Source of the DNA: Octopus sinensis | Lineage: Eukaryota | Direction: 5' to 3' | Length of the DNA stretch: 64,000 bases | Assembly: GCF_006345805.1 (NCBI RefSeq) | Contig: NC_043006.1 | Location: forward strand, 82,770,001 to 82,834,000 | Shown here: piece by piece, positions 1 through 18,591 of the stretch | Layout: the number at the start of each line of letters is the position of its first letter | Numbering within the stretch: position 1 is the stretch's first letter | The notes under the pieces: model-generated | What the model was told of the DNA's origin: nothing | The model's input: the letters and a program-made list of their open reading frames with translations, nothing else | The model's database searches: none | Translations under genes and position numbers: made by a program

Positions 1-19
1 GTAGTCAGCTCACCATGGA

Positions 20-801
20 GACACAACCTGCTTCTTGAGGTTATCTTCAAAGCTATAAAGGACCAAATTGGTCTCAACAATAGTGAAAAAAAAACGTTGA
101 AAGTACCAACTAGAGATTTCATTACCCTCGTGCGCTCAGGACAGCGGATCCGCTTCAAGAAGAGCAACAAACTTCCTGTGAGCGATGAAAAGTAGAACGG
201 CTATTGGGAGATGATTTACCAGGATGCCAGGGACTCTTTCCCATGCCAGTTATGAAAAAAAAAACGGACATTTTAATGTGGCGTGAAGGAAAGTAAGTTA
301 TGAATCTAGTCGAGTTAACGGTTCCTCATGAAGATAACATGGACGTCAATAGGGCTCAAAAGATTGACCATTATGCAAACCTTCTTGAGGAATGTGAAGA
401 CGCAGGCTCGAAAGCGGAGCATTTTCCAATCGAAGTCGAATGTAAAGTGTTTATTGGACACAGTGTGAGACCACCGTTCTTATCATTAGGCATAACCCAT
501 CGTAAAGTAAGTACCACCATGACCGATATCTAAACTACAATGGAAAAGGCTAGCCACTGGATTTGGTTAAAAATAGACTATGGGTGATGGCTAGAAGAAT
601 ATTGAGCTTTATTTAGAAACCAGTTGATCTAGTAATGGGGCCTCATATCAGTGAAGGGGGCCGGTGCGCGTTGATGCCATCGAGAGGTAGGCCCCGAAAC
701 AGCGCGCATTCTCTCTTGATGATCCCATACACTTGCTGGCTTCCGGTATGTAGAGTTCTCGACGGGTAGCACTTGCATGTGCAAGTTGTTTGCGAAACAT
801 C
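20..801 (+). mobile_element. 5'-truncated HERO/NeSL-type (R2 group, REL endonuclease) non-LTR retrotransposon 3' fragment with 17-bp TSD; mirror copy at 17792-18572 (-)
   Basis: Degenerate translation RHNLLLEVI...(K)PDILMW...LVELTVPHEDN...KIDHYANL...PIEVECKVF fits the RHN...PD...ELTVP...KY...PIEVGCRGF REL pattern. It is flanked by agtcagctcac(c/a)atgga at 3-19 and 802-818. Confidence 0.8.
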
Positions 802-15900: not shown

Positions 15901-18591
15901 TACCTACTTACTGTGGCAAACGTGCGGCCAGAGTAAGAATAGGTAGAGTGCCTCCAGAAACTGATGAGGAAGGACAAATCAGAGACGGGAATACCAGCAA
16001 CAGAGGTAGAGAGTGGTGAGGTACAGTAGAGAGAGCCCTCGAAGGGGAAATATGAAAGAACTTTGATTCATTACAAAAAGAGTGTAGAGATACAAAAAAT
16101 TTCAAAAATGAAACATACAATAAAGGTTAAAATGGCTGACAGAAAGGAAAATTGAGATGAGAAAGCGGTGTTGTTGGAGGATGATAGAGCAGGAAGGTTG
16201 CAGGAAATATTTGGCGAAAGGATAGTGATGACAGGAATTCGATTTTGTTACGATCAATTGCTATCAGTGGTACTATTTTTATTATTTGGTGGAACATTTG
16301 GTGTGATATTGTGAAAATTTTAAACAAAAGGAAACTAACAAGATACAAGACCGTTAAGTACACACTTTATTTAAAAAGCAGTAAAATGGAACTACCTGCT
16401 TTGTGGGTTAGGAAAGCCATTTCATTCACATTTCATTTATATTTATAATTCATTCGTTATATGTTTTTATGTACCCCAATGTATTGTTTTGTGGTGTCCC
16501 CTCTTTATAAAGGCCATGGGCCTTAATAAAAGAGAAAAAGCAGTTTACTGTGAGCCGTTGATAGACAGCGTTGAGTTTCGTCTAATAGTAATAGTAGTGC
16601 GTCGTGTAAATACTTTCTTTTCCCCTGCTTCGTTAGATTATCCAACATTAGGATATAACGTGAATTTTTCACCAGGTTCGGTAGCAATATTGAATAACAA
16701 TTGCATTTCAATTGGGTGTCTCTTTGTTAAGTTCTCCCAAAATACCCAAGTAGACACTCTACAGTAATTAAGCTGTTGGAGAAAGTAAGATAACAAGGTG
16801 CGGAGTAAATAAGATAGATGAAACCTCCTACATGAAACTTTGTTGTCTTTAAAACTAACCAGGTAGATATTCTACAATAATTAATTCATAGGAAAAACGG
16901 AGAATTTTGTATTACTGATGATTTTTTATAATCCGTTCAACAGTGGCTTGTATTCTTGAAAGAAAGCACGTTCCTTATTAATTCTTATTTGGTCTGGAGT
17001 ATTCTCTACACATTAATGCGGGAAGACAAAAATTTTAGGAGACATGGTTTTTGCATGTGTGTCCAGGAGTTCATTAAGTGGAATTTGTTTTGTTTTGGTG
17101 GGTAATATACTTGTTGACGGTGAATATTTAGTCTCGTTCTTAATGTGAGTTTAGTTTGTCCAATGTAGTCTTGCATCGAATTTAAATTCTTTGAAAAACA
17201 TGTCAAGTGGTTTTTTACAATAAAACTTTTTCCTGATCTAAATGTCTTAGTCGTGTCCTCAAGGTTTTCACAAGTTCTACAGTTGGATCGGCCACACCTT
17301 TTAACTGTTAGAGTTGTACCCGTAGCTGGTAGTTCTGCATTGGTAAGAAATTTTTAAGGGACTCTGGTTGACTTTGCATTTGGTTATTTTGTATGCTTCA
17401 CGTGCCTTTTTCATTCTTCAGTCTTAGCTCACTAACGGTATATTTTGATGGATAATGCTTTTCTTAATTCCTCAATGTCTATTGCTTTGGCGCGTTCTAT
17501 TCTATTCCTTATTCCCTTGTAGACGAGTACGTTCTTTCATAGAGAGCCTACTTTACTTCAAGGAGTCTTTTATTCTAAACATCTAGATTGGAAACTACTG
17601 ATTAGATCTTTCAAGTTAGGTTAAATGGAATATTGTGTTTTATGTTTTGGGTGGTATGAAGAAATTAGTATGTACTCTTTAGAGCCCGAAGGTTTGTAAC
17701 AGATGTCGGTTTCTTTGTTCGTATCATTCTTAATAATCAAAATGTCTAAGAAGGGTAGTTAGTTACGGTTAAATTCCATTGTGAGCTGACTGATGTTTCG
17801 CAAACAACTTGCACATGCAAGTGCTACCCGTCGAGAACTCTACATACCGGAAGCCAGCAAGTGTATGGGATCATCAAGAGAGAATGCGCGCTGTTTCGGG
17901 GCCTACCTCTCGATGGCATCAACGCGCACCGGCACCCTTCACTGATATGAGGCCCCGCTTACTAGATCAACTGGTTTTTAAATAAAGCTCAATATTCTTC
18001 TAGCCATCACCCATAGTCTCTTTTTAACCAAATCCAGTGGCTAACCTTTTCCATTGTAGTTTAGATATCGGTCATGGTGGTATTTACTTTACGATGGGTT
18101 ATGCCTAATGATAAGAACGGTGGTCTCACACTGTGTCCAATAAACACTTTACATTCGACTTCGATTGGAAAATGCTCCGCTTTCGAGCCTGCGTCTTCAC
18201 ATTCAAGAAGATTTGCATAATGGTCAATCTTTTGAGCCCTAGTGACGTCCATGTTATCTTCATGAGGAACCGTTAACTCGACTAGATTCATAACTTACTT
18301 TCCTTCACGCCACATTAAAATGTCCGGTTTTTTTTTCATAACTGGCATAGGAAAGAGTCCCTGGCATCCTGGTAAATCATCTCCCAATAACCGTTCTACT
18401 TTTCATCGCTCACAGGAAGTTTGTTGCTCTTCTTGAAGCGGATCCGCTGTCCTGAGCGCACGAGGGTAATGAAATCTCTAGTTGGTACTTTCAACGTTTT
18501 TTTTTTCACTATTGTTGAGACCAATTTGGTCCTTTATAGCATTGAAGATAACCTTAAGAAGCAGGTTGTGTCTCCATGGTGAGCTGACTAC
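9961..18591 (-). repeat. Right arm of giant inverted duplication (spacer 9437-9960)
   Basis: 9961 caactacgatttcacttggcc is the reverse complement of 9416-9436. The arm is colinear with the left arm apart from SNPs, microsatellite lengths, a 342-bp deletion and a minisatellite difference. Confidence 0.97.

What the first reader, a model, noticed from the sequence alone, without database searches (positions are those of the whole stretch)
1..18591. Giant fold-back inverted duplication: two ~9-kb arms around a 524-bp spacer
Seen: every element in 1-9436 recurs reverse-complemented in 9961-18591, and 18592-18900 continues the PLE interrupted at position 1, so the palindrome probably extends off-window. 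The arms are not identical (SNPs, indels, different microsatellite lengths), so this is not a simple read fold-back. Inference: it is either a real inverted segmental duplication (fold-back or break-fusion type) that has persisted despite its short spacer, or two haplotypes joined head-to-head by the assembler. If real and transcribed, it could form a multi-kb dsRNA in a lineage (coleoids) known for massive A-to-I editing.
Basis: partly seen in the sequence, partly recalled or inferred. Interest (0 to 1): 0.75.

Follow-up and report, generated by a model that had tools for sequence, protein, structure and literature searches.

The report
Nine-kilobase inverted duplication, probably real
A stretch of repeat-rich, gene-free animal DNA (probably cephalopod) is present twice, head-to-head, around a 522-base loop; the join looks like a natural fold-back copying accident rather than a sequencing artefact, but only the raw reads can prove it, and nothing suggests a function.

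Summary
Window 1-9437 and 9960-18591 are reverse complements of each other around a 522-nt non-palindromic spacer, all in one gap-free stretch of contig. The arms differ by 1.7-2.0% substitutions and 23 indels, and the window edge cuts the left arm. The differences look like real mutations: a substitution-to-indel ratio of about 7:1, CpG enrichment, microsatellite length changes and a 342-nt deletion. New here is the anatomy of the centre. The spacer and arm tips hold copies of one SINE-like octopus repeat. One copy runs collinearly across the left junction, so the left arm plus spacer is ancestral and only 9959/9960 is a new join. A 14/16-nt inverted repeat closes the loop (0 of 20,000 shuffles). 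This matches published fold-back inverted duplications. It does not match strand read-through artefact reads, which have no spacer, or canonical false duplications, which are separate contigs beside gaps. However, the arm divergence equals cephalopod heterozygosity (1.0-1.2%), so a hairpin contig built from two haplotypes and seeded by a rare chimeric molecule is not excluded. My estimate is about 0.57 for a real germline inverted duplication and about 0.3 for an artefact. The arms hold no genes. The dsRNA/editing idea is untested. Interest is low to moderate.

The parts
1..9437 (+). Left arm, cut by the window start. A mosaic of decayed TE fragments and microsatellites. Together with the spacer it is the ancestral, contiguous copy.
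9438..9959 (.). Single-copy, non-palindromic spacer (522 nt), the loop of the fold-back.
9960..18591 (-). Right arm, the inverted copy of 1-9437. It starts in the middle of a repeat element and continues into unmirrored flank at 18592.
9386..9507 (+). SINE-like repeat copy B. It runs collinearly across the left arm/spacer junction (9437/9438), which marks that junction as ancestral sequence.
   Evidence: the part beyond the junction, 9457-9507, matches 9610-9659 at 37/51, score 14 vs shuffles 8.6+-1.4, 2/500
9515..9830 (+). SINE-like repeat copy C inside the spacer. Its translation is collinear with residues 312-417 of O. bimaculoides A0A0L8HP92, an exonised copy.
9304..9385 (+). Repeat copy A1, the head/core motif. 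It forms a 53-nt tandem pair with the head of B (9331-9434), mirrored at 9963-10093.
9438..9451 (+). Left half of the short inverted repeat at the loop base (GGCCGGTGCATGTG).
   Evidence: 0/20000 shuffles; paired in the MFE fold
9931..9946 (+). Right half of the short inverted repeat at the loop base (CACATGCATACCGGCC), a 14/16 match.
9947..9959 (+). Unpaired 13-14-nt tract (TCCCCCTCTCCATG; its 5' T can equally be assigned to position 9946) between the loop-base repeat and the right arm. It is a junction insertion, a remnant of a third inverted repeat copy, or a later deletion in the left arm. The novel adjacency is 9959/9960.
   Evidence: no local template
4414..4755 (+). 342-nt block present only in the left arm. 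It is most simply read as a deletion in the right arm at 14166, with GTT microhomology and no target-site duplication; the block belongs to a local inverted repeat, part of which survives in the right arm.
3113..4037 (.). Longest perfect duplex tract (925 nt, pairs with 14561-15485). Other perfect tracts are 1734-2500 and 833-1243. They sit beside islands of 2-5% divergence.
805..1134 (+). Decayed Penelope-like RT fragment (RT residues 228-337), mirrored at 17459-17788.
   Evidence: Pfam negative
18572..18826 (-). Upstream part of the same Penelope-like RT (residues 146-232, including YLDD). It lies mostly outside the mirrored region, which shows the palindrome should continue left of the window.

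Best explanation
This is a real germline inverted segmental duplication, a palindrome with arms of at least 9.4 kb, in gene-free, TE-rich DNA. It formed by a fold-back event. A broken or stalled 3' strand end, lying in a cluster of SINE-like repeats, paired with a short inverted homology about 0.5 kb upstream on the same strand. It then primed synthesis back along its own sequence. The 522-nt loop stayed single-copy and everything proximal was copied in reverse. Shown: the structure, one ancestral and one novel junction, the inverted homology at the loop base, and mutation-like differences between the arms. Inferred: that the junction exists in the germline; that the arms then diverged to about 2-3% while arm-to-arm gene conversion erased differences in tracts of 0.4-0.9 kb; and that the event is old, roughly 2-10 Myr if the rate is 1-5e-9 per site per year, which is an assumed rate. 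There is no evidence of any function. If transcribed through, it would fold into a long hairpin RNA.
For: (1) Both arms and the spacer are in one gap-free stretch. The loop is 522 nt, asymmetric and made of bona fide repeat sequence. (2) Repeat copy B crosses the left junction collinearly, so only 9959/9960 is a new adjacency, as a fold-back predicts. (3) A 14/16-nt inverted repeat sits at the loop base (0/20000 shuffles; paired in the fold). Hermetz et al. found 766-70,466-bp single-copy spacers, 2-8-bp inverted microhomology in 13 junctions, insertions in 5, and inverted Alu/L1 homology in 3 of 21. (4) The arm differences look biological: 169 substitutions to 23 indels, Ts/Tv 1.3, CpG-linked substitutions 2.5-fold enriched, only 2-3 of 10 one-nt indels in homopolymers, and a 342-nt deletion. 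(5) Typical artefact fold-back reads turn within 200 bp, and there is no adapter remnant. (6) Canonical false duplications are separate contigs or contig-boundary overlaps next to gaps. Here there is no gap, and no other >=95% duplicate in the window. (7) An 85%-identical inverted pair 12 kb away shows that non-allelic inverted repeats occur in this region.
Against: Arm divergence (1.66-1.96%; 0.7% in the outer half, 2.7% in the inner half) is what two alleles of non-coding DNA would show in cephalopods, where genome-wide heterozygosity is 1.22% and 1.03%. Patchy divergence fits allelic coalescence as well as gene conversion. No read, depth, Hi-C or second-assembly evidence could be reached. 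The left arm leaves the window, so I cannot tell whether it ends at a contig start, which would favour an artefact. A scaffold gap lies 18.4 kb beyond the right arm, so the region was not easy to assemble. The loop-base repeat is separated from the right arm by 13-14 unpaired nt, so the junction is not a clean microhomology join. The sequencing platform is unknown; ligation-based ONT libraries can contain 0.18-7.33% inverted chimeric reads.
Confidence: 0.57

Rival explanations
1. Hairpin contig (assembly artefact). The two arms are the two haplotypes of one locus. A rare chimeric molecule or read, made by polymerase template switching or fold-back priming during library preparation or by a somatic event, supplied the 9959/9960 junction. 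The assembler then walked back along the other haplotype, and polishing sorted reads by haplotype.
For: Divergence equals the expected allelic divergence (against 29, 48). The indels are mostly microsatellite alleles plus one deletion, as between haplotypes. Inverted chimeric reads exist at 0.18-7.33% in ligation ONT libraries and 0.55-0.6% in ONT gDNA. Duplicated copies attract reads during polishing. purge_dups-type tools target duplication between contigs and at contig ends, so an inverted copy inside one contig could survive. A scaffold gap lies nearby.
Against: Typical artefact reads turn within 200 bp, whereas this loop is 522 nt of genuine repeat sequence. The junction is homology-guided, with an ancestral left side. 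There is no adapter. The geometry is unlike the described false duplications. There are no other >=95% duplicates in 64 kb. Fold-back artefacts are essentially absent from HiFi data, although the platform here is unknown.
Confidence: 0.3
2. A small real inverted repeat plus a mis-walk. Only the inner few hundred bases (for example 9139-9437 / 9960-10258, 99.3% identical) are truly inverted in the genome. The assembler turned round in it and laid down the other haplotype as the rest of the left arm.
For: The inner 299 nt are more similar (2 mismatches) than the next 4 kb (2-5%). A 49-nt minisatellite difference sits at their outer edge.
Against: A 0.3-kb repeat with a 0.5-kb loop is spanned whole by ordinary long reads, so it should not mislead an overlap assembler. 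Homology continues without any break other than repeat-length changes on the far side of the minisatellite. Similar jumps in identity occur elsewhere along the arms.
Confidence: 0.05
3. The arms are the long terminal inverted repeats of one very large foldback-type transposon.
For: Two long inverted arms around a short loop are the shape of Foldback elements (from general knowledge of the family).
Against: The arms are a patchwork of unrelated decayed TE fragments (a Penelope-like RT and at least four dispersed families) and microsatellites, not element-specific subrepeats. There is no transposase-like ORF in the loop and no second copy in the window. The ends lie off-window, so target-site duplications cannot be checked.
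Confidence: 0.03
4. Strand read-through artefact. A single read in which template and complement strands (ONT), or both strands of a SMRTbell with a missed adapter, were read as one.
For: Such reads are common.
Against: They give no spacer, or only an adapter, and arms that differ only by read errors. Here there is a 522-nt asymmetric loop, no adapter and mutation-like differences including a 342-nt deletion.
Confidence: 0.02

Closest known systems
Fold-back inverted duplications with a single-copy ('disomic') spacer (Hermetz et al. 2014, PLoS Genet, PMC3907307; short-inverted-repeat-initiated palindromes of Tanaka and colleagues)
   Same: Inverted copy joined to the original through a short single-copy spacer; one ancestral and one novel junction; inverted (micro)homology at the spacer/inverted-copy boundary; junctions sometimes inside inverted SINE/LINE pairs or carrying small insertions.
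   Different: The published cases are de novo human rearrangements with Mb-scale duplications and terminal deletions. This one is at least 9.4 kb with an unknown outer end, about 2% diverged (so old if real), and interstitial or of unknown context. Its spacer (522 nt) is slightly below the published range (766 bp and up). The 14/16-nt homology is offset by 13-14 nt from the join.
Large near-identical inverted repeats and palindromes of vertebrate genomes (human X/Y ampliconic palindromes; from general knowledge: Skaletsky 2003, Warburton 2004)
   Same: Arms over 8 kb, a short spacer, and tracts of perfect arm-to-arm identity that arm-to-arm gene conversion would explain.
   Different: Those palindromes keep over 99.9% identity and carry (testis) genes. 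Here overall identity is 98.0%, and the arms hold no detectable gene, only decayed TEs and microsatellites.
False haplotypic duplications in long-read assemblies (Rhie et al. 2021, PMC8081667; purge_dups)
   Same: Two copies whose divergence equals heterozygosity, in a repeat-rich heterozygous genome.
   Different: The described types are separate contigs or read-length overlaps at contig boundaries, giving tandem copies with a gap between them. This one is inverted, gap-free, inside one contig, with a unique loop.
Fold-back/inverted chimeric long reads (Breakinator paper PMC12870357; PMC13141652)
   Same: A same-locus, opposite-strand join.
   Different: The artefact reads turn within 200 bp and are symmetric about the read midpoint. 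Here the loop is 522 nt, the arms differ by real-looking mutations, and there is no adapter.
Hairpin-RNA (hpRNA) and inverted-repeat dsRNA loci that feed ADAR editing or endo-siRNA pathways (Porath et al. 2017, PMC5625713, for editing and dsRNA across Metazoa)
   Same: The sequence could fold into a long, almost perfect hairpin if transcribed (perfect tracts up to 925 nt).
   Different: No evidence of transcription, small RNAs or editing is available; this is only a physical possibility.

Membership tests
Fold-back inverted duplication (single-copy spacer type) | Two copies of one contiguous segment in inverted orientation | tested here: met
   8601 aligned columns, 98.0% identity, fully collinear
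Fold-back inverted duplication (single-copy spacer type) | Short, non-duplicated, asymmetric spacer between the copies | tested here: met
   522 nt with no self-complementarity (score 15 vs shuffle mean 16.9). Copy number in reads was not testable.
Fold-back inverted duplication (single-copy spacer type) | One junction is ancestral sequence; the other is the only novel adjacency | tested here: met
   Repeat copy B runs collinearly across 9437/9438 (37/51 beyond the junction, 2/500 shuffles), and the right arm begins in mid-element. Support is moderate.
Fold-back inverted duplication (single-copy spacer type) | [quoted passage not shown] | tested here: inconclusive
   A 14/16-nt inverted repeat at the loop base is highly non-random (0/20000), but it is separated from the join by 13-14 unpaired nt, and there is 0 nt of microhomology at 9959/9960 itself. 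The hybrid-repeat reading is only weakly supported (21/1000, with an equal forward-strand control).
Fold-back inverted duplication (single-copy spacer type) | Junction present in germline DNA (multiple reads, other individuals) | not testable with these tools
   No reads or second assembly could be reached.
Haplotypic false duplication (assembly artefact) | Copy divergence about equal to the heterozygosity of the individual | tested here: met
   1.66-1.96% against 1.22% (O. vulgaris) and 1.03% (S. officinalis) genome-wide. The species itself is unknown.
Haplotypic false duplication (assembly artefact) | Copies are separate contigs or lie at contig boundaries beside gaps | tested here: inconclusive
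   Both arms and the spacer are in one gap-free stretch, and the nearest gap is 18.4 kb away. The left arm leaves the window, so a contig start just upstream cannot be excluded.
Haplotypic false duplication (assembly artefact) | Half read depth on each copy, with haplotype-specific variants | not testable with these tools
   No reads are available.
Strand read-through fold-back read artefact | Strand switch within about 200 bp (no real spacer), often with an adapter remnant | tested here: not met
   The loop is 522 nt of genuine repeat sequence. Adapter scores are at background level.
Strand read-through fold-back read artefact | Arms identical apart from read errors | tested here: not met
   169 substitutions to 23 indels, CpG enrichment, few homopolymer indels, a 342-nt deletion.
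Ampliconic sex-chromosome-type palindromes | Arm-to-arm identity above 99.9%, maintained by gene conversion | tested here: not met
   98.0% overall, with perfect tracts only up to 925 nt.
Ampliconic sex-chromosome-type palindromes | Protein-coding genes in the arms | tested here: not met
   No ORF with a homologue except the exonised repeat. Pfam is negative. Only a decayed Penelope-like RT is present.
Foldback-type transposon with long terminal inverted repeats | Arms built of element-specific sequence; multiple copies with target-site duplications | tested here: not met
   The arms are a mosaic of unrelated TE fragments and microsatellites, and there is no other copy in the window. Ends and genome-wide copy number are not testable.
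hpRNA / long-dsRNA editing substrate locus | Transcription through both arms, with small RNAs or clustered A-to-G editing | not testable with these tools
   Only the folding potential is shown.

The most novel reading that the evidence does not exclude
The palindrome is a fixed germline locus that is transcribed through both arms. It yields a hairpin RNA of more than 8 kb that serves as a major ADAR substrate or sponge, or as an endo-siRNA (hpRNA) source against the Penelope-like and SINE-like families it contains. That would be a TE-derived long-dsRNA locus in a lineage with exceptional A-to-I editing.
Probability: 0.04. Interest if true: 0.6.

Novelty: new member of a known kind. Interest (0 to 1): 0.27.

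Why it matters
If real, this is an ordinary example of a well-known class: a fold-back inverted duplication, or palindrome. It lies in junk-like DNA of a poorly studied genome, and it has an unusually legible junction, with a repeat cluster, a loop-base inverted repeat, and one ancestral and one novel join. It would be a small data point on how palindromes arise and persist in repeat-rich invertebrate genomes, and a candidate long-dsRNA source worth a look in RNA-seq data. If it is an artefact, it is a useful flag. It would be an inverted, in-contig haplotypic duplication with a loop. Duplicate-purging tools target duplication between contigs and at contig ends and may not catch this type, which would inflate counts of segmental duplications and inverted repeats in this assembly.

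Tried and rejected
(1) Independent assemblies via exact-protein look-ups of junction, spacer and arm ORFs and of the O. bimaculoides protein: nothing on record.

(2) Species identification with the Helitron-like 909-aa ORF and the 852-aa LINE ORF: best hits were only 59% and 56% identical, so the species is unresolved and no close genome is in the protein collection.

(3) A concatenated junction/spacer/arm ORF search gave a single hit. That hit did identify the spacer as an exonised octopus repeat.

(4) A metagenome scan for the exact novel junction found 0 hits. A scan for the repeat core found 29 loci sharing only 21-24 nt, about the number chance predicts for an 18-mer.

(5) Rfam gave only far-sub-threshold 'miRNA' hits on TA microsatellites. 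There are no tRNAs, and Pfam found nothing on the Penelope remnant or the arm ORFs.

(6) A palindromic spacer is rejected.

(7) A third, inverted repeat copy D at the right end of the spacer, which would make a hybrid-repeat junction, has only weak support (21/1000, with an equal forward-strand control). I keep it as a possibility, not a finding.

(8) There is no adapter remnant at the centre and no templated source for the 14-nt junction tract within 20 kb.

(9) The 342-nt indel as a TE insertion is rejected: it has no target-site duplication, and it completes a local inverted repeat that is partly retained in the right arm.

(10) The sequence at the N gap gave no hint of the sequencing platform.

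(11) I considered using substitution patchiness to separate gene conversion from allelic coalescence. The over-dispersion (3.65) lies between the Poisson and geometric expectations, so it does not discriminate.
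Full report
OBSERVATION. The inverted duplication is in the sequence as described. An inverted-repeat search finds collinear arms from 86-388/18203-18505 inwards to 9139-9437/9960-10258. Blastn extends the outermost block to 1<->18591. A global alignment of 1-9437 with the reverse complement of 9960-18591 has 8601 aligned columns, 169 substitutions (98.0% identity; 95 transitions, 74 transversions) and 23 indel events totalling 867 nt. 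The spacer is 9438-9959, 522 nt. The window's only run of N is at 36971-37070, so both arms and the spacer sit in one gap-free piece of contig. The alignment reaches window position 1. A decayed Penelope-like reverse transcriptase continues at 18826-18572 on the right, beyond the mirrored part, while its downstream portion is mirrored at 805-1134 and 17788-17459. The window edge therefore cuts the left arm, not a breakpoint. Copies of the arms' repeats elsewhere in the window are only 77-90% identical, and the palindrome is the only duplicate of >=95% identity in the 64 kb.

WHAT THE ARMS ARE. There is no gene. The arms are a patchwork of a decayed Penelope-like element, at least four dispersed repeat families, long TA/GA/CA microsatellites and a 14-nt minisatellite. 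ORFs in the arms have no homologues and no Pfam domains. Rfam hits are far below threshold and lie on TA repeats, and there are no tRNAs. The rest of the window is equally TE-rich, with Helitron-like, Penelope-like and LINE ORFs. The organism could not be identified: the best hits to the Helitron and LINE ORFs are 59% and 56% identical. The only lineage clue is the spacer repeat (next paragraph but one).

NATURE OF THE DIFFERENCES. After masking simple repeats and indel edges, divergence is 1.66% (130/7835). Substitutions touching a CpG make up 18/130, against 5.6% CpG sites, a 2.5-fold enrichment. Indels are mostly microsatellite length changes. Only two or three of the ten 1-nt indels lie in homopolymers. 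One 342-nt block (4414-4755) is missing from the right arm. It has GTT microhomology and no target-site duplication, and it completes a local inverted repeat of which 27 nt remain in the right arm, so it is best read as a deletion there. These are the marks of real mutations, not long-read errors. Divergence is strongly over-dispersed (dispersion 3.65; permutation maximum 2.29). There are perfect tracts of 411, 767 and 925 nt next to islands of 2-5%. The outer half is about 0.7% diverged and the inner half about 2.7%.

THE CENTRE. This is the new information. The spacer is not palindromic, but it is not anonymous DNA either. Positions 9528-9830 translate collinearly with residues 312-417 of an Octopus bimaculoides protein (A0A0L8HP92, 46-62% identity). 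This shows that the spacer holds a copy ('C') of a dispersed, SINE-like octopus repeat that has been exonised in that gene model. The 46-53-nt core of this repeat also occurs twice at the tip of the left arm (9331-9434, a 53-nt tandem pair) and, mirrored, at the tip of the right arm. The second of these copies ('B', 9386-9507) does not stop at the arm boundary. Its continuation at 9457-9507 aligns in register with 9610-9659 of copy C (37/51; score 14 against 8.6 +- 1.4 for shuffles, reached by 2 of 500). So the left arm and the spacer are one ancestral, contiguous sequence. The right arm begins in mid-element, and 9959/9960 is the only novel adjacency. At the base of the loop, 9438-9451 (GGCCGGTGCATGTG) and 9931-9946 (CACATGCATACCGGCC) form a 14/16-nt inverted repeat. 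None of 20,000 shuffles produced one, and it pairs in the minimum-energy fold. It is separated from the right arm by 13-14 unpaired nt (TCCCCCTCTCCATG), which have no template within 20 kb. That tract begins, on the other strand, with the CATGG that follows the core in copy C. The right end of the spacer may therefore be a third, inverted repeat copy, making the junction a hybrid repeat. The support for that is weak, however (21/1000 shuffles, with an equal-scoring forward-strand control).

MECHANISM. This anatomy is that of a fold-back inverted duplication. In 21 sequenced human cases, Hermetz et al. found a single-copy spacer of 766-70,466 bp in every case. Thirteen junctions had inverted microhomology of 2-8 bp, five had small insertions, and three had about 300 bp of inverted Alu/L1 homology that created a hybrid repeat. 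The most likely history is as follows. A 3' end in a SINE-like repeat cluster, left by a break or a stalled fork, folded back onto a short inverted homology about 0.5 kb upstream on the same strand. It primed synthesis and so copied everything proximal in reverse. The structure, the single novel junction and the inverted homology are shown. The germline status of the junction, the later divergence with patchy arm-to-arm gene conversion, and any age estimate (2-10 Myr for an assumed 1-5e-9 substitutions per site per year) are inference. That it persists is not surprising, because the instability of inverted repeats falls with spacer length and divergence (abstract of PMC10164571).

THE RIVAL. 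The arm divergence is what two alleles would show: genome-wide heterozygosity is 1.22% in O. vulgaris and 1.03% in S. officinalis, and non-coding repeat-rich DNA is usually above the average. Patchiness fits allelic coalescence as well as gene conversion. So a hairpin contig remains a serious possibility: haplotype B read one way, a chimeric fold-back molecule at the turn, and haplotype A read the other way. Several things weigh against it. The common artefact reads turn within 200 bp and are symmetric; they make up 0.55-0.6% of ONT gDNA reads and are virtually absent from HiFi. Here the loop is 522 nt of genuine repeat sequence. No adapter remnant is present. Described false duplications are separate haplotype contigs or read-length overlaps at contig boundaries, which appear as tandem copies with a gap between them. 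This duplication is inverted, gap-free and inside one contig, and nothing else in the window is duplicated at high identity. An assembler-only error through the short SINE-like homologies (140 nt or less, about 83% identical) is implausible for long-read overlaps. A plain strand read-through read is excluded by the loop and by the mutation-like differences. A transposon with giant terminal repeats is unlikely because the arms are mosaics of unrelated fragments.

I put the real germline duplication at about 0.57, the haplotype hairpin at about 0.30, a small real repeat plus a mis-walk at 0.05, and the remaining rivals at 0.05 together.

WHAT COULD NOT BE DONE. No reads, depth, Hi-C data or second assembly could be reached. 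Exact-protein look-ups and metagenome scans were empty or gave chance hits. The outer end of the palindrome lies off-window. Transcription, small RNAs and editing cannot be assessed. The hairpin potential is real: a 299-bp near-perfect stem at the centre with an MFE of -742 kcal/mol for 1120 nt, and perfect tracts up to 925 nt further out. That is only a physical possibility, not evidence of function.

VERDICT. The feature is most likely a real, old, function-less fold-back inverted duplication in TE-rich DNA, a new member of a well-known kind with a nicely readable junction. An assembly hairpin made of two haplotypes cannot be excluded without reads. Interest is low to moderate.

Noticed in passing
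window 30660-32113 and 35038-36482: A second, older inverted pair (85.0% identity over 1488 nt) around a ~2.9-kb spacer that holds the Penelope-like ORFs (33234-34313 and 34401-35246, minus strand). Its right arm ends about 490 nt before the 100-N gap. It is too diverged to be allelic, so it is either an old inverted duplication or the inverted flanking-repeat arrangement that Penelope-like elements often show.
   Followed up: partly
window 9528-9830; protein P0121 (O. bimaculoides A0A0L8HP92) residues 312-417: The spacer repeat is exonised in an annotated Octopus bimaculoides 'Rho-GAP domain-containing protein'. That part of the gene model is probably a TE-derived or mis-annotated exon.
   Followed up: partly
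window 22575-26685 (minus strand): Two long ORFs (909 aa and 390 aa) of a Helitron-type Rep/PIF1 helicase. The 909-aa ORF's best database match is only 59% identical, so this may be a recently active Helitron family not represented in the protein collection.
   Followed up: partly
window 46479-49037 (+): An intact 852-aa LINE reverse-transcriptase ORF, preceded by an ORF with a poly-N/poly-I low-complexity tract. The best match is 56% identical, so it may be a young element.
   Followed up: partly
window 56000-61500: A GC-rich block (about 52% GC, GC skew about -0.45 to -0.56) with overlapping proline-rich ORFs. These may be Penelope-like, judged only from ORF content and not tested. It is followed by a long CA/TG-type microsatellite field, and its composition stands out sharply from the rest of the window.
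   Followed up: no
window 20110-20627; also 53539-54311, 55717-55859, 7200-7411 and 11650-11860: A repeat family of about 170-185 nt, present as a short tandem array just outside the right arm, as dispersed copies elsewhere, and once in each arm.
   Followed up: no
window 36971-37070: The only assembly gap (exactly 100 N). The flanks are ordinary AT-rich sequence, with no microsatellite and no duplication across the gap.
   Followed up: yes
L016, L028, L029 (ENA OFCF01 contigs), positions ~10-46: Three contigs of one metagenome assembly carry the same 21-nt match to the repeat core very near a contig end, with no further homology to the window. This is probably chance or a shared end sequence in that assembly.
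   Followed up: partly
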